The notes: generated from the sequence alone by a model not told the origin. Positions 1 to 20,300 are shown, counted from the stretch's first letter. The stretch: DNA of 63,638 nt from Schmidtea nova (GCA_044892505.1 CM097883.1:231756363-231820000); one strand, 5' to 3'. Translations and numbers: made by a program.

Positions 1-179
1 GACTATAGATCAAAATTTTTTTTTATAAACAATAACACAATATTTCGGCACAGCCTTTATAAAGGCTGTGCCGAAATATTGTGTTATTGTTTATAAAAAA
101 AAATTTTGATCTATAGTCATTATGAGAATTATTGATAATAATAATAAAAAAAGATCAAAGGTGAAAAAAGATAATTATG

Positions 180-212
<33 letters not shown>
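1..212. mobile_element. Family-A palindromic element (PLE-associated, non-autonomous), copy 1, cut by the window edge; centre deleted; (AAT)n tail
   Basis: About 1-59 is the reverse complement of about 60-119 (gactatagatcaaaa...ggcacagcctttat|aaaggctgtgccgaaa...gatctatagtc), followed by ...gatcaaaggtgaaaaaagataattatg(ata)n. Confidence 0.75.
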
Positions 213-604: not shown

Positions 605-720
605 CTAATTCTAATAATTGTTAAGCATAAAGTTATTAATTATTGATATAATGAGATTTGATCGCGAGGTTTCGTAATATAATTAGAAAAATTCCATAAT
701 TTTCTTATTATTTTTGTAAT

Positions 721-850
721 ACTGCAGGTCAAAGGCTGTGCCGAAACATCGTGTACCTAACAACGAAAAAGGATTTGACCTGTAGTCTTACAAAAATTAA
801 TATGAAAATTATTGACTTAAAATAAAGAGATCAAAGGTGAAACCAAAAGA
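721..850 (+). mobile_element. Diverged single arm of family A
   Basis: aaaggctgtgccgaaacatcgtgtac...tttgacctgtagtc...gagatcaaaggtgaaaccaaaagataatgatga aligns with the family-A arm. Confidence 0.65.
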
Positions 851-943
851 TAATGATGATATAATTAAGAAGGCATTACAAGGTTAATTTTTTTTATAAA
901 ATCCATATAATTTAACATTTGATCAATCTAGTTATAAACTTAT

Positions 944-1142
944 TTTTATTATCAATAATTCTCATAATGACTATAGATCAAAATTTTTTTTTATAAACAA
1001 TAACACAATATTTACTTGATAAAGGCTGTGCCGAAATATTGTGTTATTGTTTATAAAAAAAAATTTTGATCTATAGTCATTATGAGAATTATTGATAATA
1101 ATAATAAAAAAAGATCAAAGGCGAAAAAAGATAATTATGATA
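944..1142. mobile_element. Family-A palindromic element; left arm has lost its ribozyme part
   Basis: Inverted arms (atcaataattctcataatgactatagatc.../...gatctatagtcattatgagaattattgat) around tttacttgat. Confidence 0.75.
1013..1044 (+). ncRNA. Putative minimal type I hammerhead, U3-A8 core variant, with truncated stem I
   Basis: TAC-TTGATAA-A-GGC-TGT-GCC-GAAA-TA-T-T-GTG: core UUGAUAA, 3-bp stem II, GAAA, palindromic stem III remnant, 2-3 bp stem I. Confidence 0.45.
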
Positions 1143-1432
1143 AACTTATTTGTTTATTTAAAAATTTCCTGAGATTTGAAAGACAGATTAATTCATTATT
1201 GAAGGGATTTAATGTTTACAGTGACGTTTGGTGGAGAACACAGATATTCATTTTCAACAAACTTTACATCCAAGGGTCAAACGTGCGCATTATTCAAAGT
1301 CAAAATCGTTCACTATTCATAGGATGTATTATTCACTTGTTTGGATGTCTACAGAAATATCTTAAAATATTCAATTGTTTAATTTTATAATATTTAGAAT
1401 GAATGGTTGCATTTATAAACGAACTTTTCTAC

Positions 1433-3096: not shown

Positions 3097-3140
3097 AGAG
3101 ACCTGATGATGGCAGAGAGTCTGTCGAAATATATTGTTCT
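3097..3140 (+). ncRNA. Minimal type I hammerhead ribozyme downstream of the PLE remnant
   Basis: AGAGAC-CTGATGA-T-GGCAG-AGAGT-CTGTC-GAAA-TATA-T-T-GTTCT: canonical core, 5-bp stem II, palindromic TATA stem III, stem I with one bulge. Confidence 0.65.
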
Positions 3141-3339
3141 TTTGTTGCATAAATGAGTAAAATAATTCGATTGTTTTTACAATTGAAAGCAAATATTAGG
3201 AAAAAATAATTCTTATTTTTCAAAATTTTTAATCATAACTTGTCGAGATGAAATCTACTTTTTAAATTTCTTTTTTTGAAAAAAAAATTCACAATTGATG
3301 ATAAAATTATAATTACTTTCTCTAATATTTTCTTTCTCC

Positions 3340-4280: not shown

Positions 4281-4358
<78 letters not shown>
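4281..4358. repeat. (TACA)n/(CA)n/(TA)n microsatellite
   Basis: Direct inspection. Confidence 0.9.
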
Positions 4359-4360
<2 letters not shown>

Positions 4361-4530
4361 TAATTATCTTTTTTCACCTTTGATCTTTTTTTATTATTAT
4401 TATCAATAATTCTCATAATGACTATAGATCAAAATTTTTTTTTTATAAACAATAACACTATTGTTATTGTTTATAAAAAAAAAATTTTGATCTATAGTCA
4501 TTATGAGAATTATTGATAATAATAATATAT
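4358..4530. mobile_element. Family-A palindrome with both ribozyme segments deleted from the centre
   Basis: Arms meet at aaacaataaca-ctat-tgttattgttt. Confidence 0.75.
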
Positions 4531-4537
4531 ATATATA

Positions 4538-4725
4538 TCAATAATTGCCATAATGTTAAGACTATAGATCAAAATTTCTTTAAAAAGTACACATTATTTC
4601 GGCACAACCTTTAATACACACTTGATAAATGCTGTGTCGAAATATTGTGTACTTGTTTAAAAAAATTTTGATCTATAGTCTTACCATTATGGCAATTATT
4701 GATATTAATATTGAAAAAAGATAAT

Positions 4726-4730
<5 letters not shown>
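4538..4730. mobile_element. Family-A palindrome (diverged subfamily) followed by (TA)n to about 4790
   Basis: caataattgccataatg...ggcacaacctttaatacacacttgataaatgctgtgtcgaaatattgtgtac...ccattatggcaattattg. Confidence 0.75.
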
Positions 4731-4794
<64 letters not shown>

Positions 4795-5149
4795 TTAAAT
4801 ATCATTCTTGGCTCCTGGTCAAGGATTTCGTGGGAGTTTTGACGATTGGATCCAATATTTCTATAAATTTTCAATTCAAAGTCACTTCCTACTGAGTCTA
4901 TTTGGTTACCGATAGTTAAAGTTATTACTTAAAGCAATGGAGATATTTGTTTTAAAACCAATACAATTTACTACCTTTCGAATTGTGATTTATTTACAGC
5001 ATCAGATTGGTGTCAAGAAAAAGATAGAAATGGTAAATGATAAGATCATTAATTATTATTTTATTATTTCTATTCATATTAATTTGATATTTGATATTTA
5101 TCATTTTATAAATTTTTGTTATTATATTTGTATTATTGACCTGCACAAT

Positions 5150-5750
5150 TTAACAAACCCCACTATATCACGATTATGTAAATTTCTTCATGCAATTCCC
5201 TCATTTAAATCTGAATATTTAAACAACTTAACGATTTTAGGATGAATTAAAATAAATACCAAGTCTTTCGAAAATGCGTATGTTAAAGAAGTGAATGCTG
5301 AATATGATGATTTTCTATGTTTTGAAATTAATCCAAAATTTAACGAACCTCTCTTGTTTGATCTAGTAGAAAAGTATGAAAATGAAAGTTCTGAAAATGA
5401 AAAAACAAATGATAATTCTGTTGAAGAGGTAAAAGAAGATACAGTAATAACAGGATTCAAAGTCTATGCAAGAAAACTTGAAAAATACTTCCAAGCTAAT
5501 ATTCCTGACAAGATGAACAAAATATGGGATTTGATTGATGAAATTCATGGAGAAAAAGCATCTAGACAATTGAAAATCACGGACTTTATTATGCATCAAA
5601 GAAATAAAAATTGTGATAAATAGGTGTAATAAATACATTTTTTGTGAAATCTTTGATATTGTTATGCTAATAACAGTTCATATTATTTTTTAATTTGAAC
5701 ATTTGAAAAAATTGGAACGCTAGTGTAGCCATATTAAACAGGGTTGACTG
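5150..5750 (+). mobile_element. pogo/Tigger-like DNA transposon 3' remnant
   Basis: ORF 5291-5623 is acidic and ends in RQLKITDFI, a PIP-box-like motif as at pogo transposase C-termini. The terminus ...aaacagggttgactg|TA (reverse complement TA|CAGTCAACCCTG) fits pogo CAGT ends and a TA TSD. Confidence 0.5.
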
Positions 5751-5888
5751 TATTATATAAATTTACATACTAAATTAAAAAATTATAAATTGCTAACATA
5801 ATTTTATATATTTAATTTATTACAGTTTGTTTTAAATATAATAATTAATTTTTTAAAAATCAATTAATCTCATATTAATAATTCTTAC

Positions 5889-7450
5889 ACCCCTTGTTTA
5901 TAAGCTTTTAATAATTCAACATTTCTTTTCAACAGTTTTCTTTTTTTTATAATTCGTATTTTATTTTACCTAATTTCTAGATTATTTTGAAAAGACCCAC
6001 ATATTTCTTTCACTTTTATTAACATTTGGCTATTTATTATAAATTCTTTGTTTATTATATTATCTTGTTTGTATTTCCTTTTCCTGTTTTCAAAACCATA
6101 TTTCGTACCTCATTTAACCTGTCGAATTTTGTACAGTTGCATTTAGAATGAATTCTATTTTTGGTAATATCTCTGACCAATCATTGTGTCGTTTGTCTTT
6201 CAATGAGGCATTTAAATAATCTATGATTGTTCTGAACTGACTTTCTATTAGTCCATCTGCATTGAGATGATATGGGCTTGAATATTTTATTTTTATAAAG
6301 TGCATTTTCATTAGTTCTTTAAACACATTAGATTCAAATATTATTTCACAATCAAAATTAATTATTTTTGATGCTCCGAATTTTAGGATATAAATTTTTT
6401 CATAATTGTGTTTACAGTGGTTTTATCATCTTGTTTTGAAACTGATTTAGTCCTATATATTGACAAAATTGATCAATCTTTGCGAAAATATATTTCTTTC
6501 GAAGAAAGCTTACTTGAGGTGAACCACAAAAGTTTCAATGGATTATCTTTAATTATCTAACTTATACTTGTTTTATTATTATCTCTTTTGTTTTAGTTGT
6601 CATTGCCTTCTGTTTTTGGAGATTAAACAGTCATATTTTGCTATTTTTGTCTTTGACTTAAACTTTTCCCATAAGTATCATATTTGAAATATTGTGGAAA
6701 TAGCTAAAGGTTCCTTCCTTGTTATGAAGTATTCTAGTTCATGTTTGTTCATTGAATGTTAACCAAACGCTAAAACTTTCATTTTCTTCCATATCTCTTT
6801 TTGATAAAACAGTACATATTGTGTCAAAATTGGAATCCGTATCTAAAATAAAATCGCCTTTAAAATTTGAATATGTAAGTATTGGTTCTAGTGATAAACT
6901 TTAAAGATTATCACAACTGACTATACAGATAACAATGACACGATCAATTCAATATCATCACAGGTTATTATACAATGCTTATTACAGCATTTATTACAGC
7001 TTATTACAACACTAGCTTATAATTCCTAAATTTTAACGATCACTCATTTCTGACTTGTATTCAACAATTGACAAAGCGAACTGGATGTTCTCTTTCTTTG
7101 ACCTGATATATACTCGATAGGCTTCGACTCCTTTATTATTCGATTAATTCTTTTTTCTCACGTTTTCCAATAATACAACTTTATTTTGACTCAATAAGTT
7201 TCTTAATCAGTTTCCTCTATCACAATTTAATTTATCAATCTAAGTTCTAATTCATCTGCTGAGTTTCTCCCTTTTATAGTTTGTTATTCCTTGGTACTTG
7301 AGAGTACTCTTGTTTTCCCATTTTTTTGCCTTCAGCATATTTCATACTTTCTTCATAGCTCCTGCATCATCTCTGACAGTTGTCGATATATGTCATTATT
7401 TTCATTTTAGTTATTTCGAATGTTCTTCTGCACTTTTTTTATCTCTGACA
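5889..7450 (-). mobile_element. Degenerate Gypsy/Ty3 LTR retrotransposon remnant in a gene A intron
   Basis: RNase H fragment GDFILDTDSNFDTICTVLS (about 6780-6860), integrase fragment SSPYHLNADGLIESQFRTI...ILPKIEFILNAT (6114-6326), and PPT aagggg followed by TG at 5889. Many stops; outer boundary approximate. Confidence 0.8.
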
Positions 7451-7848
7451 AGCTGTCAAGATATAAATTTTCCTCTTATTTTTGTTTTCAATTTTGGAAT
7501 TTATTTTTACCTTTTGTATTTGTTAATTAGCAATAACCTTCTTTTACTTTATTGTTTGAAATGTTTTATTTTTTTAAATTTTTTACTCTCATTCTTTCTT
7601 CTCAGAATTTCAGAACATAACACTGTTTACTCTATCAAATTTCCCCCAAACATTTTATTTATTTTTTATGATATTATTTAATTTTATTATTTAGGTTTCC
7701 TCAACAGTTATAAGAAATAGCATCGAATATCACAAAACACATTGAATACATAATAATACTGGAGACTATAAAACCAATACTGTAATAAAAGTTTATTTTA
7801 TAAAATAAATAAATTTATAACGCATACTTTGCTAATTTGTCACGTAAC

Positions 7849-7925
7849 CTTGAATTTTCAAAATCATGTTCATTGATGGATGATTTAGATGCCTCCCATA
7901 TTTCTTCATATTTTGAATTAATTAT
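7849..7925 (-). CDS. Gene A exon (IINSKYEEIWEASKSSINEHDFENS)
   Basis: 77 bp, phase 0-2, AG/GT boundaries, 45-bp upstream intron. Confidence 0.8.
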
Positions 7926-7970
7926 CTATACTTTTATAATTTAGAAACAAAGTTAAAAAAACTAAATTAC

Positions 7971-8054
7971 ATCTTGGTCTTTTAATAATTGATGGAATCG
8001 GCCTTGGAGTTGCGATTTCGGAAAAAATGACTCTTGGATTGATGCTCTCAACTC
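7971..8054 (-). CDS. Gene A exon (ELRASIQESFFPKSQLQGRFHQLLKDQD)
   Basis: 84 bp, phase 0-0, the same size as and homologous to gene B exon 58161-58078. Confidence 0.85.
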
Positions 8055-8096
8055 CTACAAAACAAAAAAATACAAACAAAAAGAATCTTCAATTAC

Positions 8097-8175
8097 CTGA
8101 TTTTTATTTCGTTGCTCTGCTATTTCAACATTTAGTTTCTCAATAGAATCTAAAAATTTTACCGTCGAAGAAATC
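8097..8175 (-). CDS. Gene A exon (ISSTVKFLDSIEKLNVEIAEQRNKNQ)
   Basis: 79 bp, phase 2-0, the same size as and homologous to gene B exon 60046-59968 (LDSIEKLNFEISEQR). Confidence 0.85.
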
Positions 8176-8216
8176 CTAACAAAGTATAAAAGAATCCAAA
8201 TACTCGAACGTCTTAC

Positions 8217-8326
8217 TTTAAAGAGGTTATATCGCTTTCACAAAAAGAATTAACATGAAACTTAAAAGCTTCAACTGAACAAGATGGAAATTCTTGAATT
8301 CCAGGAATGTGATTTTCTATATTTTC
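8217..8326 (-). CDS. Gene A exon (ENIENHIPGIQEFPSCSVEAFKFHVNSFCESDITSL)
   Basis: 110 bp, phase 0-2, gtaaga donor, 41-bp downstream intron; phase compatible with the giant-exon donor at 11333. Confidence 0.75.
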
Positions 8327-8627
8327 CTAAGATTTAGTTTAGGATAAAAAATACGACTTGAATTATAAAACATTGCTAGGTTCTTATTTATATTTTATAA
8401 TATACATCATTAAAAATATGCTTATCAAATGTCAATAAACATAGAATTTCCCAGTTTACATATATCAGTGTTTGAAAGTACAAAATGGAGATTTCTTGGT
8501 AGCAGCATTTATTAAGTATTAAATAATTAATAAATGAAAAAATAAGACTTTGCTGCAAAAGTTATTATTAAGTGAAAATTTTCGATTATAAAATAATCCT
8601 TATCAATCTCATATTCAAAATATGGCC

Positions 8628-8800
8628 TGAATCTTCACCGTATATTACTGTTTCTTTCTAGTGAATTATCTCTTTTATTTTATTGGATGTAAATCTGATT
8701 AATATAAATTTTAAAATTTAAAATTAATATAAATCAGATTTACATTCAATAGAAAAGAGATACTTCATGAGAAAGAAACAGCAATACATGAGGAAGATTC
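8628..8800. repeat. About 170-bp imperfect foldback (MITE-like)
   Basis: gaatcttc...ctgtttctttct...tgtaaatctgatt / aaatcagatttaca...agaaagaaacag...gaagattc. Confidence 0.65.
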
Positions 8801-8903
8801 CAGTTTTATTTTGAATTTCCAAACATGCTTTATTTGACCCAGAAAATAACAATATTCAGACTACAAAACAATTATTGATTATCACATATGGCTACATAGA
8901 TTA

Positions 8904-9060
8904 NNNNNNNNNNNNNNNNNNNNNNNNNNNNNNNNNNNNNNNNNNNNNNNNNNNNNNNNNNNNNNNNNNNNNNNNNNNNNNNNNNNNNNNNNNNNNNNNN
9001 NNNNNNNNNNNNNNNNNNNNNNNNNNNNNNNNNNNNNNNNNNNNNNNNNNNNNNNNNNNN
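8904..9060. other. N run (157 bp)
   Basis: Undetermined or masked bases abutting a family-A element. Confidence 0.95.
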
Positions 9061-9228
9061 ATAGATCAAAATTTTTTTTTATAAACAATAACACAATATT
9101 TCGGCACAGCCTTTATCAAGTGTGTATTTCTGTGCCGAAATATTGTGTTATTGTTTATAAAAAAAAAATTTTGATCTATAGTCATTATGAGAATTATTGA
9201 TAATAATAATAAAAAAAGATCAAAGGTG
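9061..9228. mobile_element. Family-A palindrome flanked by N runs
   Basis: Inverted arms; the left arm keeps the full ribozyme segment. Confidence 0.75.
9087..9129 (-). ncRNA. Best-preserved putative U3-A8 variant type I hammerhead
   Basis: Reverse complement: AATA(C)ACAC-TTGATAA-A-GGC-TGT-GCC-GAAA-TA-T-T-GTGT-TATT; 8-bp bulged stem I formed within one arm. Confidence 0.55.
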
Positions 9229-9403
9229 NNNNNNNNNNNNNNNNNNNNNNNNNNNNNNNNNNNNNNNNNNNNNNNNNNNNNNNNNNNNNNNNNNNNNNNN
9301 NNNNNNNNNNNNNNNNNNNNNNNNNNNNNNNNNNNNNNNNNNNNNNNNNNNNNNNNNNNNNNNNNNNNNNNNNNNNNNNNNNNNNNNNNNNNNNNNNNNN
9401 NNN
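9229..9403. other. N run (175 bp)
   Basis: Undetermined or masked bases. Confidence 0.95.
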
Positions 9404-9443
9404 ATGGCCTATTATTAATAAAAACACGAAATCGCCAAACAAT

Positions 9444-9482
9444 AGAAATATATTTCAAGGACATAGTCCTCATCATCAGTCT
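9444..9482 (-). ncRNA. Minimal type I hammerhead, mirror copy in the left PLE arm
   Basis: Reverse complement of 10457-10495. Confidence 0.65.
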
Positions 9483-9872
9483 GCCATCATAATCTAAATC
9501 AAATGTTATATACGGAAACAGTAATGGCGTAATGGCTATGATTTAATGAGTTAATTAAATAATCTCAATAAATTTGTTGCTGATTGAATATTAATTGTAG
9601 GGGATTGTGATTTAATCACCAACGCCTCACATAATATTCTTTCCCATTTATTATTAAAGTTTTTTAATATAATTTTAAAATCTTTTAAATCAGTTTCTCC
9701 TATACACATTTTTCTATGCTCAATAATATTACTCACACCTCTCAATCGGCTATGTTCCTGAACCCGTGTGCGGAGATGACGGGAAGTCTCTCCAATGTAT
9801 GTGGCATTGCACCCATTACAAGAAAACTTATACACTAGATCAGAAACTAAACCTATTGGGGTTTGAGATTTA

Positions 9873-10388
9873 TTGATTGAGCCTGATGAAAGCATTGGAA
9901 ATGGTAGTCCATCTAATGATAGTGAACATTTAAAAACGCACGTTTTAGTAATTCCATATTCGGAAGGTTTTAAAAATTTTAAGTGTTCTATAATGAAATC
10001 CTTAGGAAATTCTAACATATTTAACATAGTGTCAAAGTCTTTAAAATCAGTAAATATGTTTAGTAATAAATCTCAAACCCCAATAGGTTTAGTTTCTGAT
10101 CTAGTGTATAAGTTTTCTTGTAATGGGTGCAATGCCACATACATTGGAGAGACTTCCCGTCATCTCCGCACACGGGTTCAGGAACATAGCCGATTGAGAG
10201 GTGTGAGTAATATTATTGAGCATAGAAAAATGTGTATAGGAGAAACTGATTTAAAAGATTTTAAAATTATATTAAAAAACTTTAATAATAAATGGGAAAG
10301 AATATTATGTGAGGCGTTGGTGATTAAATCACAATCCCCTACAATTTATATTCAATCAGCAACAAATTTATTGAGATTATTTAATTAA
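9873..10388 (+). pseudogene. 5'-truncated PLE ORF: RT-endonuclease linker and GIY-YIG endonuclease
   Basis: VLVIPY...LVYKFSCNGCNATYIGETSRHL.TRVQEH...ERILCEALVI; the reverse transcriptase domain is absent. Confidence 0.85.
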
Positions 10389-10456
10389 CTCATTAAATCA
10401 TAGCCATTACGTCATTACTGTTTCCGTATATAACATTTGATTTAGATTATGATGGC

Positions 10457-10495
10457 AGACTGATGATGAGGACTATGTCCTTGAAATATATTTCT
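10457..10495 (+). ncRNA. Minimal type I hammerhead ribozyme in the PLE 3' region
   Basis: AGA-CTGATGA-T-GAGGAC-TAT-GTCCTT-GAAA-TATA-T-T-TCT: canonical core, 6-bp stem II, palindromic stem III, short stem I. Confidence 0.7.
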
Positions 10496-11333
10496 ATTGT
10501 TTGGCGATTTCGTGTTTTTATATATATATATAATGATACATATATCTGACACTCATTTTCAAAAAATAATAAAGAACGTCGAATGCTTTTAAAATGTGGA
10601 AAAGAATAAAATTAACAGAATTGCACAAAGAAATGAACGCTATTGTTAATGAGTAAATATAGGTTTATTACTTGAAAATAGATAGATAAAACAAGATCTA
10701 ATAGAGAAAGCCTTTAAGAAGAAAAATAGGCACGACAATAAAAATGAATGTATAGAATTCTATTATCATAATTTTGCTAAACTGGGTTCTTAAGTTGCAA
10801 AAAAGGATAAGAAATTAGGATTTTCTATAAATATACAGATAGCATAAAAAAGATGATAAAAATTAGTGAATAAAATATTTTCCGATACAATCAATGGCGT
10901 TTAGCAAGCTTCAGGCAGATCTTTGATTCTATCAAGAGACGCTTCTGATGGAGAAAAAGAATCAATGGCGGATCAAAATGTGGGAAACGTTTGATCTTTC
11001 ATAAGGTTAAAAGGTGGCATGGATCCCCAAGATTTTAATAATATCTGAGTTCGAATTCAAAATGCTACGTAATAAAATATTACAAAATAAAATAAACAAT
11101 TTGAACTGAAAATAAATAAATGTTAAATAACAGATTTTATAAATTCAAATTGGATTATGAAAAAGTCAGTTCAATTATATTATGGAAAAAAAGTAGAGAC
11201 AAGTAATTAAAAAACGAAGAATTAAATAGATATCAACACTAAAAAATAAAAGAAAAAAATAGATTAAAAGAAAAAGAAAAAATCCTAATAAAAAAATAAC
11301 TAAAAAATTTATAAAATAAATAAAAAAACAAAC

Positions 11334-14300
11334 TTCCGAAGGAAATTTCAATTTGAAATATTTAGATTGCAAATGCAATAATTCCCGTTCCAAACACTCA
11401 ATGTGGGTTTGGAGTTCAATGACCAATGGAATAGGAAGGTAGGACCGGCAGCTTGAGATGAGGGAGAGCATATCGTTGATCATAAATTCTTTATCGGATT
11501 GAACCAGATCCAATTTAAGTAACTTTGAGATAATATCGGATGTAAATTCATGAAAGTCTATAAGAATAGCAGCTTTTTCATTTCTAATCAACATCAAATC
11601 GTGATTTTTGTTCTCTAGTTCTTTATACAACTCAACAAGTTTCTCGTTTGCGTCTCCATCCTTTCGGTAAATAACACATTCACTCATTTCCTTTGCCAAG
11701 AAATCGACATTTAGTTCCAGCTCCTCTCTCTGTCTTGTTAGTTCATGTATGATGCTGTTCTTTTCTTTCAGTTTCAATTCTACTTCTGTGTCTTTATTGA
11801 TAAGTTCCCGTTTCAGTTGATCAATTTCATGTGTCAAAGCTGATTTATGATCTTCAAGCACTGAAATGGCGCGGTTCTTTCCTTCTAATTCCTGATAGAT
11901 CTCAGTCAGTTTGCCCTCAGACACATCTGTTGGTGTTTCGTGAATGATTACGGAAGTCTTCTCTGAAGACGTCAATGTCTCAACAATTCTTGATTGATCT
12001 GTTGTCGTGAATTGAGAATTTATTCTTTCTGTACGAAGTTGTTGAATTTCTTTCAAAAGATCTTCGATTCTTGTTTGCAATTCTTCAATTATTTTCGCAT
12101 CATCAGTCACAGAGACCGCCATCGATTGAGGTGCTTGTTCTGGTTTTATTATCTCTTCTCCGTCAACAAAAGTATCGCCTTCAGTAACATAGTCTTTATG
12201 AATGATTGTTCTTGTTATTTGTTTAAATGAATCAACGGACTGTTCTCTTAATTCATGTAATTCCGTTTGTAATCTTTCAACATCCGTCAATAGAGCCAGT
12301 TTCTCATTTCTGAGTGTTACAATGTCGAGATTCTTTGAGTCGATCTCTTTGTACAATTCTCCAAAAATGTCACTAAAGTCGCTGTCTTGACCAAATGTTT
12401 CTGTTTTTTCTGTCACTCTTCGACTCATTTGATCAATGTTTGATTCCAGAGATACTTTAATGGAATGCAATTCACTGATGATTGTTTCTTTTTCTTTTAA
12501 TTTCAAAGTGAAACTTTCGTATTTCTGATGCATTTCTCGTCGCAATTTATCAATGTCATCTAATAGAGTAACCTTTTCATTTCTCAACAACATCAAATCG
12601 TGATTTTTGTTCTCTAGTTCTTTATACAACTCAACAAGTTTCTCGTTTGCGTCTCCATCCTTTCGGTAAATAACACATTCACTCATTTCCTTTGCCAAGA
12701 AATCGACATTTAGTTCCAGCTCCTCTCTCTGTCTTGTTAGTTCATGTATGATGCTGTTCTTTTCTTTCAGTTTCAATTCTACTTCTGTGTCTTTATTGAT
12801 AAGTTCCCGTTTCAGTTGATCAATTTCATGTGTCAAAGCTGATTTATGATCTTCAAGCACTGAAATGGCGCGGTTCTTTCCTTCTAATTCCTGATAGATC
12901 TCAGTCAGTTTGCCCTCAGACACATCTGTTGGTGTTTCGTGAATGATTACGGAAGTCTTCTCTGAAGACGTCAATGTCTCAACAATTCTTGATTGATCTG
13001 TTGTCGTGAATTGAGAATTTATTCTTTCTGTACGAAGCTCTTGAATTTCTTTCAAAAGATCTGCGATTCTTGTTTGCAATTCTTCAATTATTTTCGCATC
13101 ATCAGTCACAGAGACCGCCATCGATTGAGGTGCTTGTTCTGGTTTTATTATCTCTTCTCCGTCAACAAAAGTATCGCCTTCAGTAACATAGTCTTTATGA
13201 ATGATTGTTCTTGTTATTTGTTTAAATGAATCAACGGACTGTTCTCTTAATTCATGTAATTCCGTTTGTAATCTTTCAACATCCGTCAATAGAGCCAGTT
13301 TCTCATTTCTGAGTGTTACAATGTCGAGATTCTTTGAGTCGATCTCTTTGTACAATTCTCCAAAAATGTCACTAAAGTCGCTGTCTTGACCAAATGTTTC
13401 TGTTTTTTCTGTCACTCTTCGACTCATTTGATCAATGTTTGATTCCAGAGATACTTTAATGGAATGCAATTCACTGATGATTGTTTCTTTTTCTTTTAAT
13501 TTCAAAGTGAAACTTTCGTATTTCTGATGCATTTCTCGTCGCAATTTATCAATGTCATCTAATAGAGTAACCTTTTCATTTCTCAACAACATCAAATCGT
13601 GATTTTTGTTCTCTAGTTCTTTATACAACTCAACAAGTTTCTCGTTTGCGTCTCCATCCTTTCGGTAAATAACACATTCACTCATTTCCTTTGCCAAGAA
13701 ATCGACATTTAGTTCCAGCTCCTCTCTCTGTCTTGTTAGTTCATGTATGATGCTGTTCTTTTCTTTCAGTTTCAATTCTACTTCTGTGTCTTTATTGATA
13801 AGTTCCCGTTTCAGTTGATCAATTTCATGTGTCAAAGCTGATTTATGATCTTCAAGCACTGAAATGGCGCGGTTCTTTCCTTCTAATTCCTGATAGATCT
13901 CAGTCAGTTTGCCCTCAGACACATCTGTTGGTGTTTCGTGAATGATTACGGAAGTCTTCTCTGAAGACGTCAATGTCTCAACAATTCTTGATTGATCTGT
14001 TGTCGTGAATTGAGAATTTATTCTTTCTGTACGAAGTTGTTGAATTTCTTTCAAAAGATCTTCGATTCTTGTTTGCAATTCTTCAATTATTTTCGCATCA
14101 TCAGTCACAGAGACCGCCATCGATTGAGGTGCTTGTTCTGGTTTTATTATCTCTTCTCCGTCAACAAAAGTATCGCCTTCAGTAACATAGTCTTTATGAA
14201 TGATTGTTCTTGTTATTTGTTTAAATGAATCAACGGACTGTTCTCTTAATTCATGTAATTCCGTTTGTAATCTTTCAACATCCGTCAATAGAGCCAGTTT

Positions 14301-17300
14301 CTCATTTCTGAGTGTTACAATGTCGAGATTCTTTGAGTCGATCTCTTTGTACAATTCTCCAAAAATGTCACTAAAGTCGCTGTCTTGACCAAATGTTTCT
14401 GTTTTTTCTGTCACTCTTCGACTCATTTGATCAATGTTTGATTCCAGAGATACTTTAATGGAATGCAATTCACTGATGATTGTTTCTTTTTCTTTTAATT
14501 TCAAAGTGAAACTTTCGTATTTCTGATGCATTTCTCGTCGCAATTTATCAATGTCATCTAATAGAGTAACCTTTTCATTTCTCAACAACATCAAATCGTG
14601 ATTTTTGTTCTCTAGTTCTTTATACAACTCAACAAGTTTCTCGTTTGCGTCTCCATCCTTTCGGTAAATAACACATTCACTCATTTCCTTTGCCAAGAAA
14701 TCGACATTTAGTTCCAGCTCCTCTCTCTGTCTTGTTAGTTCATGTATGATGCTGTTCTTTTCTTTCAGTTTCAATTCTACTTCTGTGTCTTTATTGATAA
14801 GTTCCCGTTTCAGTTGATCAATTTCATGTGTCAAAGCTGATTTATGATCTTCAAGCACTGAAATGGCGCGGTTCTTTCCTTCTAATTCCTGATAGATCTC
14901 AGTCAGTTTACCCTCAGACACATCTGTTGGTGTTTCGTGAATGATTACGGAAGTCTTCTCTGAAGACGTCAATGTCTCAACAATTCTTGATTGATCTGTT
15001 GTCGTGAATTGAGAATTTATTCTTTCTGTACGAAGCTCTTGAATTTCTTTCAAAAGATCTGCGATTCTTGTTTGCAATTCTTCAATTATTTTCGCATCAT
15101 CAGTCACAGAGACCGCCATCGATTGAGGTGCTTGTTCTGGTTTTATTATCTCTTCTCCGTCAACAAAAGTATCGCCTTCAGTAACATAGTCTTTATGAAT
15201 GATTGTTCTTGTTATTTGTTTAAATGAATCAACGGACTGTTCTCTTAATTCATGTAATTCCGTTTGTAATCTTTCAACATCCGTCAATAGAGCCAGTTTC
15301 TCATTTCTGAGTGTTACAATGTCGAGATTCTTTGAGTCGATCTCTTTGTACAATTCTCCAAAAATGTCACTAAAGTCGCTGTCTTGACCAAATGTTTCTG
15401 TTTTTTCTGTCACTCTTCGACTCATTTGATCAATGTTTGATTCCAGAGATACTTTAATGGAATGCAATTCACTGATGATTGTTTCTTTTTCTTTTAATTT
15501 CAAAGTGAAACTTTCGTATTTCTGATGCATTTCTCGTCGCAATTTATCAATGTCATCTAATAGAGTAACCTTTTCATTTCTCAACAACATCAAATCGTGA
15601 TTTTTGTTCTCTAGTTCTTTATACAACTCAACAAGTTTCTCGTTTGCGTCTCCATCCTTTCGGTAAATAACACATTCACTCATTTCCTTTGCCAAGAAAT
15701 CGACATTTAGTTCCAGCTCCTCTCTCTGTCTTGTTAGTTCATGTATGATGCTGTTCTTTTCTTTCAGTTTCAATTCTACTTCTGTGTCTTTATTGATAAG
15801 TTCCCGTTTCAGTTGATCAATTTCATGTGTCAAAGCTGATTTATGATCTTCAAGCACTGAAATGGCGCGGTTCTTTCCTTCTAATTCCTGATAGATCTCA
15901 GTCAGTTTGCCCTCAGACACATCTGTTGGTGTTTCGTGAATGATTACGGAAGTCTTCTCTGAAGACGTCAATGTCTCAACAATTCTTGATTGATCTGTTG
16001 TCGTGAATTGAGAATTTATTCTTTCTGTACGAAGTTGTTGAATTTCTTTCAAAAGATCTTCGATTCTTGTTTGCAATTCTTCAATTATTTTCGCATCATC
16101 AGTCACAGAGACCGCCATCGATTGAGGTGCTTGTTCTGGTTTTATTATCTCTTCTCCGTCAACAAAAGTATCGCCTTCAGTAACATAGTCTTTATGAATG
16201 ATTGTTCTTGTTATTTGTTTAAATGAATCAACGGACTGTTCTCTTAATTCATGTAATTCCGTTTGTAATCTTTCAACATCCGTCAATAGAGCCAGTTTCT
16301 CATTTCTGAGTGTTACAATGTCGAGATTCTTTGAGTCGATCTCTTTGTACAATTCTCCAAAAATGTCACTAAAGTCGCTGTCTTGACCAAATGTTTCTGT
16401 TTTTTCTGTCACTCTTCGACTCATTTGATCAATGTTTGATTCCAGAGATACTTTAATGGAATGCAATTCACTGATGATTGTTTCTTTTTCTTTTAATTTC
16501 AAAGTGAAACTTTCGTATTTCTGATGCATTTCTCGTCGCAATTTATCAATGTCATCTAATAGAGTAACCTTTTCATTTCTCAACAACATCAAATCGTGAT
16601 TTTTGTTCTCTAGTTCTTTATACAACTCAACAAGTTTCTCGTTTGCGTCTCCATCCTTTCGGTAAATAACACATTCACTCATTTCCTTTGCCAAGAAATC
16701 GACATTTAGTTCCAGCTCCTCTCTCTGTCTTGTTAGTTCATGTATGATGCTGTTCTTTTCTTTCAGTTTCAATTCTACTTCTGTGTCTTTATTGATAAGT
16801 TCCCGTTTCAGTTGATCAATTTCATGTGTCAAAGCTGATTTATGATCTTCAAGCACTGAAATGGCGCGGTTCTTTCCTTCTAATTCCTGATAGATCTCAG
16901 TCAGTTTACCCTCAGACACATCTGTTGGTGTTTCGTGAATGATTACGGAAGTCTTCTCTGAAGACGTCAATGTCTCAACAATTCTTGATTGATCTGTTGT
17001 CGTGAATTGAGAATTTATTCTTTCTGTACGAAGCTCTTGAATTTCTTTCAAAAGATCTGCGATTCTTGTTTGCAATTCTTCAATTATTTTCGCATCATCA
17101 GTCACAGAGACCGCCATCGATTGAGGTGCTTGTTCTGGTTTTATTATCTCTTCTCCGTCAACAAAAGTATCGCCTTCAGTAACATAGTCTTTATGAATGA
17201 TTGTTCTTGTTATTTGTTTAAATGAATCAACGGACTGTTCTCTTAATTCATGTAATTCCGTTTGTAATCTTTCAACATCCGTCAATAGAGCCAGTTTCTC

Positions 17301-20300
17301 ATTTCTGAGTGTTACAATGTCGAGATTCTTTGAGTCGATCTCTTTGTACAATTCTCCAAAAATGTCACTAAAGTCGCTGTCTTGACCAAATGTTTCTGTT
17401 TTTTCTGTCACTCTTCGACTCATTTGATCAATGTTTGATTCCAGAGATACTTTAATGGAATGCAATTCACTGATGATTGTTTCTTTTTCTTTTAATTTCA
17501 AAGTGAAACTTTCGTATTTCTGATGCATTTCTCGTCGCAATTTATCAATGTCATCTAATAGAGTAACCTTTTCATTTCTCAACAACATCAAATCGTGATT
17601 TTTGTTCTCTAGTTCTTTATACAACTCAACAAGTTTCTCGTTTGCGTCTCCATCCTTTCGGTAAATAACACATTCACTCATTTCCTTTGCCAAGAAATCG
17701 ACATTTAGTTCCAGCTCCTCTCTCTGTCTTGTTAGTTCATGTATGATGCTGTTCTTTTCTTTCAGTTTCAATTCTACTTCTGTGTCTTTATTGATAAGTT
17801 CCCGTTTCAGTTGATCAATTTCATGTGTCAAAGCTGATTTATGATCTTCAAGCACTGAAATGGCGCGGTTCTTTCCTTCTAATTCCTGATAGATCTCAGT
17901 CAGTTTGCCCTCAGACACATCTGTTGGTGTTTCGTGAATGATTACGGAAGTCTTCTCTGAAGACGTCAATGTCTCAACAATTCTTGATTGATCTGTTGTC
18001 GTGAATTGAGAATTTATTCTTTCTGTACGAAGCTCTTGAATTTCTTTCAAAAGATCTGCGATTCTTGTTTGCAATTCTTCAATTATTTTCGCATCATCAG
18101 TCACAGAGACCGCCATCGATTGAGGTGCTTGTTCTGGTTTTATTATCTCTTCTCCGTCAACAAAAGTATCGCCTTCAGTAACATAGTCTTTATGAATGAT
18201 TGTTCTTGTTATTTGTTTAAATGAATCAACGGACTGTTCTCTTAATTCATGTAATTCCGTTTGTAATCTTTCAACATCCGTCAATAGAGCCAGTTTCTCA
18301 TTTCTGAGTGTTACAATGTCGAGATTCTTTGAGTCGATCTCTTTGTACAATTCTCCAAAAATGTCACTAAAGTCGCTGTCTTGACCAAATGTTTCTGTTT
18401 TTTCTGTCACTCTTCGACTCATTTGATCAATGTTTGATTCCAGAGATACTTTAATGGAATGCAATTCACTGATGATTGTTTCTTTTTCTTTTAATTTCAA
18501 AGTGAAACTTTCGTATTTCTGATGCATTTCTCGTCGCAATTTATCAATGTCATCTAATAGAGTAACCTTTTCATTTCTCAACAACATCAAATCGTGATTA
18601 TTGTTCTCTAGTTCTTTATACAACTCAACAAGTTTCTCGTTTGCGTCTCCATCCTTTCGGTAAATAACACATTCACTTATTTCCTTTGCCAAGAAATCGA
18701 CATTTAGTTCCAGCTCCTCTCTCTGTCTTGTTAGTTCATGTATGATGCTGTTCTTTTCTTTCAGTTTCAATTCTACTTCTGTGTCTTTATTGATAAGTTC
18801 CCGTTTCAGTTGATCAATTTCATGTGTCAAAGCTGATTTATGATCTTCAAGCACTGAAATGGCGCGGTTCTTTCCTTCTAATTCCTGATAGATCTCAGTC
18901 AGTTTGCCCTCAGACACATCTGTTGGTGTTTCGTGAATGATTACGGAAGTCTTCTCTGAAGACGTCAATGTCTCAACAATTCTTGATTGATCTGTTGTCG
19001 TGAATTGAGAATTTATTCTTTCTGTACGAAGTTGTTGAATTTCTTTCAAAAGATCTTCGATTCTTGTTTGCAATTCTTCAATTATTTTCGCATCATCAGT
19101 CACAGAGACCGCCATCGATTGAGGTGCTTGTTCTGGTTTTATTATCTCTTCTCCGTCAACAAAAGTATCGCCTTCAGTAACATAGTCTTTATGAATGATT
19201 GTTCTTGTTATTTGTTTAAATGAATCAACGGACTGTTCTCTTAATTCATGTAATTCCGTTTGTAATCTTTCAACATCCGTCAATAGAGCCAGTTTCTCAT
19301 TTCTGAGTGTTACAATGTCGAGATTCTTTGAGTCGATCTCTTTGTACAATTCTCCAAAAATGTCACTAAAGTCGCTGTCTTGACCAAATGTTTCTGTTTT
19401 TTCTGTCACTCTTCGACTCATTTGATCAATGTTTGATTCCAGAGATACTTTAATGGAATGCAATTCACTGATGATTGTTTCTTTTTCTTTTAATTTCAAA
19501 GTGAAACTTTCGTATTTCTGATGCATTTCTCGTCGCAATTTATCAATGTCATCTAATAGAGTAACCTTTTCATTTCTCAACAACATCAAATCGTGATTTT
19601 TGTTCTCTAGTTCTTTATACAACTCAACAAGTTTCTCGTTTGCGTCTCCATCCTTTCGGTAAATAACACATTCACTCATTTCCTTTGCCAAGAAATCGAC
19701 ATTTAGTTCCAGCTCCTCTCTCTGTCTTGTTAGTTCATGTATGATGCTGTTCTTTTCTTTCAGTTTCAATTCTACTTCTGTGTCTTTATTGATAAGTTCC
19801 CGTTTCAGTTGATCAATTTCATGTGTCAAAGCTGATTTATGATCTTCAAGCACTGAAATGGCGCGGTTCTTTCCTTCTAATTCCTGATAGATCTCAGTCA
19901 GTTTGCCCTCAGACACATCTGTTGGTGTTTCGTGAATGATTACGGAAGTCTTCTCTGAAGACGTCAATGTCTCAACAATTCTTGATTGATCTGTTGTCGT
20001 GAATTGAGAATTTATTCTTTCTGTACGAAGTTGTTGAATTTCTTTCAAAAGATCTTCGATTCTTGTTTGCAATTCTTCAATTATTTTCGCATCATCAGTC
20101 ACAGAGACCGCCATCGATTGAGGTGCTTGTTCTGGTTTTATTATCTCTTCTCCGTCAACAAAAGTATCGCCTTCAGTAACATAGTCTTTATGAATGATTG
20201 TTCTTGTTATTTGTTTAAATGAATCAACGGACTGTTCTCTTAATTCATGTAATTCCGTTTGTAATCTTTCAACATCCGTCAATAGAGCCAGTTTCTCATT

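What the first reader, a model, noticed from the sequence alone, without database searches (positions are those of the whole stretch)
9087..9129. Putative hammerhead ribozyme with a covariant U3-A8 core inside a repeated palindromic element
Seen: family-A arms read AATA(C)ACAC-UUGAUAA-A-GGC-UGU-GCC-GAAA-UA-U-H-GUGU-UAUU. Stem I (4+4 bp with a bulge) and stem II form within one arm, so they are not a by-product of the palindrome. The copy at 56769-56810 keeps an 8-bp stem I with a different register, and position 17 is U or C (C at 57142-57172 on the minus strand). Established: the core C3-G8 is a tertiary Watson-Crick pair, U3-A8 is a tolerated natural covariation, and minimal type I hammerheads with palindromic stem III occur in PLE pLTRs and can act as dimers. 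The canonical hammerheads here share the extra base after A9 and the GAAA-TA(TA)-T-T layout. A CUGANGA motif scan would miss this family.
Basis: partly seen in the sequence, partly recalled or inferred. Interest (0 to 1): 0.85.

Follow-up and report, generated by a model that had tools for sequence, protein, structure and literature searches.

The report
Penelope-type mini-hammerhead motif, U3-A8 variant
The motif is real and sits at the very start of a very abundant ~130-base retroelement of the Penelope type, but this U3-A8 hammerhead variant was already described in flatworm Penelope elements in 2014, and nothing here shows that it actually cleaves.

Summary
On the minus strand, 9087-9129 reads stem I, UUGAUAA, A, GGC-UGU-GCC, GAAA, UA, U, U, stem I'. 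Sixteen related arms lie in the window.

The arms are not a DNA-transposon palindrome. Each arm is a ~125-135-nt retroposon-like unit that starts at the motif and ends in (AAT)n or (AT)n. Pairs sit head-to-head, one arm full-length and the other 5'-truncated at a variable point. Some copies carry an optional ~50-nt 3' extension. These are Penelope-like element (PLE) hallmarks. A true PLE pair with GIY-YIG ORF ends and canonical minimal hammerheads lies 300 bp away, in the same layout.

Evidence on the ribozyme is mixed:
- **For:** chance expectation is about 0.01 per 32 kb. Core positions differ in 2 of 144 cells, against 16% in the rest of the unit. The motif lies on the element's sense strand.
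- **Against:** there is no stem covariation. Helix II is broken without compensation in three arms. One subfamily lacks stem I. A covariance model built from canonical PLE hammerheads gives only 9-12 bits. At this locus a -61 kcal/mol hairpin would sequester the motif.

Natural U3-A8 covariation was published in 2011, and in Schistosoma PLEs in 2014. First-stage readers of this scan flagged this family on other DNA of the same genome many times. Verdict: a new member of a known kind, with cleavage untested.

The parts
9087..9129 (-). Complete U3-A8 minimal hammerhead-like motif. Stem I 5' strand 9120-9128; U3-A9 9119-9113; extra A 9112; helix II and loop 9111-9103; G12-A14 9102-9100; A15.1-U-A-U16.1 9099-9096; U17 9095; stem I 3' strand 9094-9087. 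Predicted cut lies between 9095 and 9094.
   Evidence: Sequence read; descriptor hit 9091-9123(-); the MFE of the 52-nt RNA is the hammerhead-compatible fold.
9061..9129 (-). Full-length arm (unit) of the palindrome. Its 5' end is at 9128/9129. Its 3' part is masked by N below 9061 and was not filled in.
   Evidence: Public contigs diverge into heterogeneous flank at 9128-9131 (table 7).
9130..9228 (+). Inverted partner arm, 5'-truncated inside helix II (starts CTGTGCC). It has no core and no stem I 5' strand. It runs into N at 9229.
1..183 (.). Head-to-head pair. Minus arm 1-59 (cut by the window start), plus arm 60-183, followed by (AAT)n to about 213. Both arms are truncated at A8/A9, with centre TTTATAAA.
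716..866 (+). Divergent solo unit. Its 5' end reads GTAATAC. The core is replaced (AGGTCAA in place of TTGATAA) and it reads GAAACATC, but AAAGGCTGTGCCGAAA is identical to the family.
945..1144 (.). Head-to-head pair. Minus arm 945-1013 is truncated at A13/A14. Plus arm 1014-1144 starts at positions 2.2/2.1 (ACTTGATAAA).
4351..4527 (.). Head-to-head pair without any hammerhead core. The minus arm (4351-4458) starts at G1.1. The plus arm (about 4462-4527) starts at about U1.2. The two are separated by TAT.
4538..4733 (.). Head-to-head pair flanked by (AT)n. Minus arm 4538-4612 is truncated at U7/A8. Plus arm 4613-4733 is full-length, but its helix II reads UGC/GUC (10.1-11.1 mismatch).
56463..56598 (-). 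Solo full-length unit that directly abuts (AAT)n. Helix II reads GUC/GCC (broken). The alternative hairpin ACAGACUU/AAGUCUGU is predicted instead.
56686..56908 (.). Head-to-head pair. Minus arm 56686-56768 starts at position 2.2, has helix II GAC/GCC (broken) and the short 3' end. Plus arm 56769-56908 is full-length, has helix II GGC/GUC and a 3+5 bp stem I.
57043..57303 (.). Head-to-head pair. Minus arm 57043-57172 starts at U3 and has C17. Plus arm 57175-57303 is full-length, begins GTATTACAGAC, has only 2 contiguous stem I pairs, and is cut by N.
9441..10498 (.). Comparison locus: a head-to-head pair of 5'-truncated autonomous PLE copies. GIY-YIG ORF ends lie at 9551-10027(-) and 9873-10388(+). 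Canonical minimal hammerheads lie at 9441-9485(-) and 10454-10498(+), each about 27 nt from its 3' end in a (TA)n or (TAA)n tract.
   Evidence: Homologues with canonical motifs occur in L003 and L004.
3097..3141 (+). Canonical minimal hammerhead of a second family. A decayed copy of it lies at 43349-43393(+).

Best explanation
Family A is a short, non-coding retroelement of the Penelope type, about 125-135 nt long. It is either a non-autonomous parasite of PLEs or an extreme solo piece of a PLE tail. I infer that a PLE reverse transcriptase/endonuclease copies it into (AAT)n or (AT)n microsatellites.

The palindromes are the head-to-head double copies that PLE insertion typically leaves. One arm is full-length. 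The other is an inverted copy truncated within the first ~35 nt, probably through priming from both cut strands or through snap-back self-priming.

Nucleotides 1-42 of the unit are a derived minimal type-I hammerhead, homologous to the canonical ones in neighbouring PLEs. The C3-G8 pair is replaced by U3-A8, helix II is shrunk to 3 bp, and AUAU stands in for helix III.

If the motif is active, two sense copies would pair through AUAU, probably with protein help, and cut after U17. That is between 9095 and 9094 on the minus strand.

What is shown: the motif, the architecture of the unit, the PLE-like insertion signatures, and the conservation of the core block. What is inferred: homology to true hammerheads, mobilisation by PLE enzymes, and any catalysis. 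At this locus a transcript crossing both arms would fold into a long hairpin, so this copy is most likely inert.
For: **Motif.**

**Unit anatomy.**
- The alignment of arms shows a defined 5' end at AATACACAC or GTAATACAGAC, and 3' ends in microsatellite.
- There are two alternative 3' ends about 50 nt apart, each preceded by AATTAT(T)GATAAT. This matches the optional PLE 'tail' and the two RT start sites described in PMC11167929.
- Solo units abut microsatellite on both sides (56463-56598, 716-866).
- In public contigs of the same organism, 5,000 to 18,000 contigs per run lie on the stretch. They diverge into heterogeneous flank exactly at 9128-9131, so most copies are solo units that begin at stem I.

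**PLE context.**
- Head-to-head inverted 5'-truncated copies, microsatellite bias and tails are published PLE hallmarks (PMC8557442, PMC3846280).
- A pair with GIY-YIG ORF ends and canonical minimal hammerheads lies at 9441-10498 in the same arrangement.
- Those canonical motifs are under structural selection: 84% of cells pair against 57% in shuffles, with 7 compensatory pairs and 0 of 500 shuffles as high.

**Conservation.**
- Among 10 arms the core positions differ in 2 of 144 cells, against 140 of 870 in the rest of the unit (Fisher p = 4e-8). Helix II varies more, at 6 of 87 cells.
- No variant reaches 5% between 9095 and 9128 in the public contigs.

**Precedent.** U3-A8 covariation occurs naturally and such cores are active in vitro (PMC3088659). 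U3-A8 minimal hammerheads were found in Cercyon PLEs of S. mansoni (PMC4209133).
Against: - No stem covariation appears in the six arms that have a full motif.
- Helix II has uncompensated breaks in 56564-, 56743- and 4630+.
- Stem I is reduced to 2 contiguous pairs in the arms whose 5' strand reads ACAGAC.
- The divergent unit at 716-866 keeps the helix II-GAAA block but not U3-U7.
- The block TTTTGATCTATAGTC is as conserved as the core, at 3 of 150 cells, so conservation is not specific to the ribozyme.
- The arms are not independent copies, so the Fisher test is optimistic.
- The model of canonical PLE hammerheads gives only 9-12 bits, E = 1.4-8. Rfam finds nothing, but it also misses the canonical controls.
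- The fold has z = -0.53.
- A 3-bp helix II and a 4-bp all-AU dimer helix are weaker than in the published minimal hammerheads, which have a 7-8 bp helix II, and even those cleave poorly in vitro (PMC4209133).
- No family A unit in this window is linked to a PLE ORF.
- No RNA data could be obtained.
Confidence: 0.6

Rival explanations
1. Relic or exapted module. The motif descends from a PLE hammerhead but no longer cleaves. C3>U and G8>A are ordinary GC-to-AT transitions in a 30% GC genome, and helix II collapsed. The block is kept because the PLE machinery recognises it, or because it forms another 5' structure, or simply because the copies are young.
For: - Helix breaks are uncompensated and there is no covariation.
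- The divergent unit at 716-866 keeps AAAGGCTGTGCCGAAA but loses U3-U7.
- In the ACAGAC arms a competing hairpin, ACAGACUU/AAGUCUGU, is the predicted fold.
- PLE clades without hammerheads proliferate well (PMC8557442).
- Hammerhead mutants do not impair PLE insertion in vitro, and no RNA ends were seen at the cut site in Anolis (PMC11167929).
- The score against the canonical model is at noise level.
Against: - Both members of the tertiary pair changed together and every other core position is intact in all 8 arms that retain the core.
- U3-A8 cores are active in vitro (PMC3088659).
- In the public contigs, the best-supported alternative palindrome junctions place arm starts within a few nt of the predicted cut site (table 5). 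One such pair lies at 4351-4527. This hints at cleaved templates.
Confidence: 0.28
2. Chance resemblance inside a foldback or MITE-type DNA transposon. In this reading the palindrome is the mobile unit, and the UUGAUAA...GAAA string is an accident of AT-rich sequence.
For: - UUGANAA is common in 30% GC DNA, with many partial matches.
- The U3-A8 descriptor has a non-zero chance rate of 0.01 per 32 kb, which is a few hundred hits per gigabase.
- The palindromes form very stable hairpins.
Against: - Solo arms with defined 5' ends exist and seem to be the majority.
- The inner junction varies from pair to pair, while the outer ends are constant and lie in microsatellites of varying length, not in a fixed target duplication.
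- The motif sits at nt 1-42 on the sense strand, in the same layout as canonical motifs of coding PLEs 300 bp away.
Confidence: 0.05
3. The relevant product is the long hairpin RNA or DNA. The palindromes would matter as sources of small RNAs or as cruciform-forming, fragile sites, and the hammerhead-like string would be irrelevant to that role.
For: - The hairpin has -61.3 kcal/mol and z = -17.
- There are sub-threshold matches to many miRNA precursor models.
- In A. vaga, small-RNA profiles switch polarity across inverted PLE structures (PMC3846280).
Against: - All miRNA hits fall below the gathering scores and differ between models, as expected for any perfect hairpin.
- Most copies appear to be solo arms.
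- This reading does not explain the conserved core block.
- It does not exclude the main explanation.
Confidence: 0.07

Closest known systems
Minimal hammerhead ribozymes (min-HHR) of Penelope-like elements, U3-A8 variant of Cercyon PLEs in Schistosoma mansoni (Cervera and de la Pena 2014, PMC4209133)
   Same: - Type-I layout without a real helix III.
- Palindromic 15.2-16.2.
- Unpaired nucleotide between A9 and 10.1.
- G10.1-C11.1 pair.
- Short helix I.
- U3-A8 in place of C3-G8.
- Flatworm host, according to earlier notes of this scan.
- Mostly single dispersed motifs, with some pairs on opposite strands 100-700 bp apart.
   Different: - Helix II is 3 bp with a UGU loop, against the published 7-8 bp.
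- The palindrome is AUAU (4 nt), while the canonical neighbours here have AUAUAU.
- The motif forms the first 42 nt of a ~130-nt non-coding unit and is not embedded in a coding PLE's repeat.
- No link to a PLE ORF was seen in this window.
Canonical min-HHRs of the PLE copies in this window (9441-9485, 10454-10498, 3097-3141) and of related contigs L003 and L004
   Same: - Same order of elements, same extra base, GAAA-UAUA-U-U/C.
- Head-to-head pairs.
- 3' ends in AT-rich microsatellite.
- UAUUGUUU follows stem I both in family A and in 10454-10510.
   Different: - Those have C3-G8 and a 5-6 bp helix II with clear compensatory changes.
- They lie about 70-115 nt downstream of a GIY-YIG ORF.
- A model built from them gives family A only 9-12 bits.
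Animal non-LTR retrozymes (Cervera and de la Pena 2020, PMC7229834; Li et al. 2026 preprint 10.64898/2026.07.22.740005)
   Same: Short non-coding units with a type-I hammerhead, regarded as non-autonomous derivatives of PLEs. Earlier notes of this scan report them as abundant in this same genome.
   Different: Retrozymes are head-to-tail tandem repeats of about 170-400 nt with canonical cores, and they give rise to circular RNAs. Family A shows no tandem copies in the window. It occurs solo or head-to-head and ends in microsatellite.
Schistosome SINE-like elements with hammerheads (Sm-alpha, Sj-alpha; cited in PMC6765202)
   Same: A short interspersed retroposon of a flatworm that carries a hammerhead.
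   Different: Those carry a canonical, active hammerhead with loops that make tertiary contacts, and a promoter upstream of it. They share no sequence with family A and show no head-to-head habit. This comparison rests on the literature and was not tested here.

Membership tests
Hammerhead ribozyme, minimal type I (PLE type) | Core C3-U4-G5-A6-N7-G8-A9 and G12-A13-A14 | tested here: inconclusive
   U4, G5, A6, A9 and G12-A14 are present in all 8 arms that retain the core. Positions 3 and 8 are U and A, the published isosteric variant (PMC3088659, PMC4209133). The divergent unit at 716-866 lacks U3-U7.
Hammerhead ribozyme, minimal type I (PLE type) | A15.1-U16.1 pair, palindromic 15.2-16.2, and H17 not G | tested here: met
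   GAAA-UA-U-U/C occurs in 11 of the 12 family A arms that retain this segment. The exception, 4594-, reads GAAAUAA.
Hammerhead ribozyme, minimal type I (PLE type) | Unpaired nucleotide between A9 and 10.1, and a G10.1-C11.1 pair closing helix II | tested here: met
   The extra A is invariant. G10.1-C11.1 is present in all arms but 4630+. Helix II is only 3 bp, and its middle pair is broken in 56564- and 56743-.
Hammerhead ribozyme, minimal type I (PLE type) | Helix I of 4 or more bp flanking the core | tested here: inconclusive
   - 4+4 bp with a bulge in 9087-9128(-).
- 3+5 bp in 56769-56810.
- 4 bp in 4613-4654.
- Only 2 contiguous pairs in 56555-56596(-) and 57177-57218.
Hammerhead ribozyme, minimal type I (PLE type) | Helices supported by compensatory changes across copies | tested here: not met
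   75.8% of cells pair against 75.2% in shuffles. The covariation score is 0.109 against 0.109, with 273 of 500 shuffles as high. The sample is only six arms of low diversity. The positive control on canonical PLE motifs passes.
Hammerhead ribozyme, minimal type I (PLE type) | Significant score against a covariance model of the family | tested here: not met
   Rfam gives no hammerhead hit at E up to 10, but it also misses the canonical controls and so is uninformative. My own model built from four canonical PLE motifs scores 57-59 bits for canonical copies, 30.9 for a decayed copy, and 9-12 bits (E = 1.4-8) for family A.
Hammerhead ribozyme, minimal type I (PLE type) | Site-specific self-cleavage 3' of H17 | not testable with these tools
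   Only assembled contigs of unknown library type were available, so no RNA ends could be read. The one indirect hint is that arm starts cluster near G1.1 in alternative junctions.
Penelope-like element (PLE) or PLE-dependent unit | ORF with RT and GIY-YIG endonuclease | tested here: not met
   Family A units are about 130 nt and non-coding. The neighbouring canonical pair has GIY-YIG ORF ends at E = 0.004-0.005, below Pfam's cut-off. Family A can therefore be at most a non-autonomous unit or a solo tail piece.
Penelope-like element (PLE) or PLE-dependent unit | Inverted 5'-truncated copy adjacent to the 5' end (head-to-head), with a variable junction | tested here: met
   There are seven pairs in the window. 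Five combine one full or nearly full arm with one more truncated arm. In the other two (1-183 and 4351-4527) both arms are truncated. All seven junctions differ. The hallmark is described in PMC8557442 and PMC3846280.
Penelope-like element (PLE) or PLE-dependent unit | Insertion bias for microsatellites and an optional 30-40-bp tail | tested here: met
   Outer ends lie in (AAT)n or (AT)n. There are two alternative 3' ends about 50 nt apart with a repeated end motif. The tail here is somewhat longer than the published range.
Non-LTR retrozyme | Head-to-tail tandem repeats, each with a hammerhead | tested here: not met
   No tandem family A copies occur in the window.
MITE or foldback DNA transposon | Terminal inverted repeats as the mobile unit, with a fixed target-site duplication | tested here: not met
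   Solo arms have defined ends, inner junctions vary, and there is no fixed duplication.

The most novel reading that the evidence does not exclude
Family A would be an ultra-compact hammerhead (U3-A8, 3-bp helix II, AUAU dimer helix) that really cleaves in vivo, and its cleaved RNA would be reverse transcribed. The hammerhead-less head-to-head pairs whose arms begin at or next to G1.1 would then be the genomic footprints of ribozyme-cut templates. One such pair lies at 4351-4527, and 11 of the 15 best-supported alternative junctions in public contigs are of this kind. This would be the first in vivo trace of PLE hammerhead cleavage, in a ~130-nt SINE-like PLE parasite that looks extremely abundant (5,000-18,000 contigs per run lie on it; the true copy number is not known).
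Probability: 0.15. Interest if true: 0.6.

Novelty: new member of a known kind. Interest (0 to 1): 0.3.

Why it matters
The biological role of hammerheads in Penelope-like elements is still open. They cleave poorly in vitro, are dispensable for insertion in vitro, and are absent from very successful PLE clades.

A family that is this abundant, this small, and that places the ribozyme-like motif at nucleotide 1 is a convenient natural test case. Its copy-number history, the distribution of its 5' ends and its RNA ends could show whether cleavage happens in vivo, or whether the motif survives for another reason.

For annotation, the practical point is different. CUGANGA scans and the Rfam models miss both this family and the canonical PLE motifs. 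Such palindromes should therefore be masked as PLE-type repeats and not reported as new ribozymes or as miRNA hairpins.

Tried and rejected
- **Rfam.** I searched at gathering threshold and at E up to 10, on 11.5 kb and on two short stretches. There was no hammerhead hit, even for canonical controls, only sub-threshold miRNA-like hits caused by the palindrome.
- **Public collections.** A metagenome scan and a viral scan for the helix II-GAAA-stem I string gave two unrelated chance matches and none, respectively. No independent copies could be collected for covariation analysis.
- **Sequencing runs.** The only runs are assembled contigs of unknown library type, so starts, ends and strand of RNA cannot be read.
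- **PLE relatives.** A protein search with the GIY-YIG ORF end, followed by fetching three contigs, found relatives that carry canonical motifs, not U3-A8 ones.
- **Candidate at 43361.** The TTGATAA there is not a U3-A8 core. It lies inside helix II of a decayed canonical motif that reads CUGAAGU.
- **Dimer folding.** Co-folding two monomers predicts domain-swapped or GAAAUAUAUUUC duplexes. It cannot represent the dimeric hammerhead, so I drew no conclusion from it.
- **Supplements and papers.** The supplement of PMC4209133 and the paper PMC5785218 are not held.
- **Masked stretches.** I did not fill or infer the N stretches next to the finding. No contig looked human.

Full report
**What is there**

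The window is 30% GC and holds seven masked N stretches, two of which flank the finding. In hammerhead numbering:
- U3-A9 is 9119-9113.
- The extra A is 9112.
- Helix II is 9111-9103.
- G12-A14 is 9102-9100.
- A15.1-U-A-U16.1 is 9099-9096.
- U17 is 9095.
- Stem I pairs 9120-9128 with 9087-9094, as 4+4 bp with a bulged C.

The block GGCTGTGCCGAAATAT occurs 13 times with up to 2 mismatches, against 0 expected. A second block, TTTTGATCTATAGTC, occurs 14 times against 0.49 expected. Together they define 16 arms.

A relaxed descriptor finds three U3-A8 arms and three canonical motifs. Simulated sequence of the same dinucleotide make-up gives 0.01 and 0 hits per 32 kb.

**What the repeat is**

Aligning the arms outward shows a short unit. 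It has these features:
- It begins at AATACACAC, or at GTAATACAGAC in a second subfamily. That is exactly the first nucleotide of stem I.
- It runs through the motif, a variable A-rich stretch, the conserved TTTTGATCTATAGTC box and an AATTATTGATAAT box.
- It ends in (AAT)n or (AT)n.
- Some arms stop at the AATTATTGATAAT box (56743-, 4594-, and the left arm of the pair at 945-1144). Most carry about 50 more nt that end in a near-repeat of the same box. This gives two alternative 3' ends.
- Solo units abut microsatellite on both sides (56463-56598 and 716-866).

Seven pairs sit head-to-head. In five of them one arm is full or nearly full and the partner is truncated at a different point: positions 2.2, U3, U7/A8, C10.3 and A13/14. 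In the other two both arms are truncated, at A8/A9 in 1-183 and at G1.1/U1.2 in 4351-4527. The finding itself is such a pair. The minus arm (9061-9129) is complete at its 5' end. The plus arm (9130-9228) starts inside helix II.

Public contigs of the same organism show that the family is extremely abundant: 5,000-18,000 contigs per run lie on these 168 bases. Contigs leave the reference into heterogeneous AT-rich sequence at 9128-9131, so most copies are solo units with that 5' end.

**Why I call it Penelope-type**

Published hallmarks of PLE insertions are an inverted 5'-truncated copy next to the 5' end, a strong microsatellite bias, an optional tail, and hammerheads near the 3' end (PMC8557442). 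Head-to-head palindromic junctions are explained by self-priming (PMC3846280). A purified PLE protein nicks and extends both DNA strands and starts reverse transcription at two adjacent internal sites that delimit the tail (PMC11167929). All of these fit family A.

A positive control lies in the window itself. The segment 9441-10498 is a head-to-head pair of longer copies. Their ORF ends match GIY-YIG at E = 0.004-0.005, below Pfam's cut-off but in both arms. Each carries a canonical minimal hammerhead about 70 nt after the stop codon and about 27 nt before a (TA)n or (TAA)n tract.

Proteins 53-69% identical to that ORF end occur on AT-rich metagenome contigs, and the two I inspected with enough downstream sequence also carry canonical minimal hammerheads.

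The orientation that 5' truncation and the 3' ends assign to family A is the orientation in which the motif reads as a hammerhead. This is a non-trivial agreement.

**Is the motif a ribozyme?**

In favour:
- It has every feature that Cervera and de la Pena list as emerging from PLE minimal hammerheads beyond their descriptor: the base between A9 and 10.1, G10.1-C11.1, and palindromic 15.2-16.2 (PMC4209133).
- Positions 3 and 8 have both changed, to the isosteric U-A pair. That pair is known to covary in nature and to be active in vitro (PMC3088659).
- The core-equivalent positions are nearly invariant among 10 arms, at 2 of 144 cells. The rest of the unit differs in 140 of 870 cells, and helix II in 6 of 87.
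- No variant reaches 5% between 9095 and 9128 in the public contigs, and summed depth peaks over helix II-GAAA-AUAU.
- The MFE fold of the isolated 52-mer is the hammerhead-compatible one.

Against:
- The six arms with a complete motif give no covariation: 75.8% paired against 75.2% in shuffles, and a score of 0.109 against 0.109. Four canonical PLE motifs covary strongly on the same test: 84% against 57%, seven compensatory pairs, 0 of 500 shuffles as high.
- Three arms carry uncompensated breaks in the 3-bp helix II.
- The arms whose 5' strand reads ACAGAC keep only two contiguous stem I pairs and are predicted to form a competing hairpin.
- The divergent unit at 716-866 keeps AAAGGCTGTGCCGAAA exactly but has lost U3-U7.
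- The TTTTGATCTATAGTC box is as conserved as the core.
- The arms are related copies, so the Fisher test overstates significance.
- A model built from canonical PLE motifs scores family A at 9-12 bits, within noise.
- The fold is no better than shuffles, at z = -0.53.
- A 3-bp helix II and a 4-bp all-AU dimer helix are weaker than in published minimal hammerheads, which already cleave poorly (PMC4209133, PMC6765202).
- At this locus any transcript that crosses both arms would fold into a -61.3 kcal/mol hairpin. That hairpin buries helix II, GAAA, AUAU and the 3' strand of stem I.

**A lead worth recording**

Relative to this reference, 11 of the 15 best-supported alternative junctions in the public contigs join 9088-9099 to 9143-9149, with different filler letters (tables 5 and 5c). 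In these palindromes both arms start within a few nucleotides of the predicted cut site, which is G1.1 at 9094 and 9145. The window holds one such pair at 4351-4527.

This could be the footprint of ribozyme-cut templates. It could equally be a fold-back hot spot at the AAUAUU hexamer, or one amplified sub-lineage. Only the top 15 of 134 junctions were shown, and depths from contigs are not copy numbers.

**Comparison with what is known, and novelty**

Natural U3-A8 covariation was reported in 2011 (PMC3088659). In 2014 a U3-A8 minimal hammerhead was found through the Cercyon PLE of Schistosoma mansoni. A matching descriptor retrieved about 1,300 mostly single motifs, and dual motifs on opposite strands 100-700 bp apart were noted (PMC4209133).

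Family A is therefore a new member of that kind. Its distinguishing traits are the 3-bp helix II, the AUAU palindrome, its position at nucleotide 1 of a ~130-nt non-coding unit, and its very high abundance. It is not a retrozyme in the strict sense, because there are no tandems. It is not a MITE either.

First-stage readers of this scan noted the same family on other DNA of this genome many times. Some of those notes state that coding Penelope copies carry this tail, which I could not check here. Earlier notes also call the organism a flatworm or planarian, which I did not verify.

**Verdict**

My estimates are:
- About 0.6 that the motif is a PLE-derived hammerhead variant in a PLE-mobilised unit.
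- About 0.3 that the family still cleaves in vivo.
- About 0.05 that the resemblance is chance.

Interest is modest, at 0.3. The biology is known in outline, cleavage is untested, and the main value lies in correct annotation and in a clean natural test case for the unresolved role of PLE hammerheads.

Noticed in passing
window 11175-39971 (-): A single open reading frame of 9,598 aa runs through about 28 exactly spaced 999-bp (333-aa) tandem units. Pfam finds no domain above threshold in a two-unit sample or in either end. It could be a giant repetitive protein gene or exon, or an assembly collapse or expansion.
   Followed up: partly
window 45084-45294 (-), and about 44514 (+): A fragment of eukaryotic SSU rRNA scores 107.8 bits over model positions 1151-1666, with a large internal gap. 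A similar short stretch lies on the opposite strand about 700 bp away. This looks like an rRNA pseudogene fragment in an inverted duplication.
   Followed up: no
window 9441-10498: A head-to-head pair of 5'-truncated coding PLE copies with GIY-YIG ORF ends and identical canonical minimal hammerheads. The pair starts 38 bp beyond the masked stretch (9229-9403) that follows the finding.
   Followed up: yes
window 3097-3141, 10454-10498; L003:1090-1134; L004:1677-1721: Canonical PLE minimal hammerheads from two window families and two metagenome contigs show strong compensatory covariation in helices I and II. Rfam release 15 detects none of those in the window, even at E = 10.
   Followed up: yes
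window 4351-4527, and public contigs laid on 9061-9228: In some hammerhead-less head-to-head pairs both arms start at or next to the predicted cleavage site. Eleven of the 15 best-supported alternative junctions in public contigs are of this kind.
   Followed up: partly
window 716-866 (+): In this divergent unit the core is replaced, and the new sequence CAGGTCAAA is perfectly complementary to the equally altered box TTTGACCTG about 45 nt downstream. This is either a different 5' structure or coincidence.
   Followed up: no
window 43349-43393 (+), 7172-7216 (-), 43549-43580 (-): Decayed canonical minimal hammerheads scoring 30.9, 14.4 and 13.9 bits with the canonical model. The first ends in (AAT)n like family A.
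   Followed up: partly
window 56951-56990 (-): A tail-only fragment of the family (ATGATCAAAGGTGAAAAAAAGATAATT) embedded in (AAT)n. It is an extreme 5' truncation.
   Followed up: no
runs X5, X7, X8 (soil metagenomes) and X6 (organism B): Parts of the 168-base stretch (18-46% of sampled words) occur in soil metagenome runs and in a second organism. Related copies may therefore exist outside this genome.
   Followed up: no
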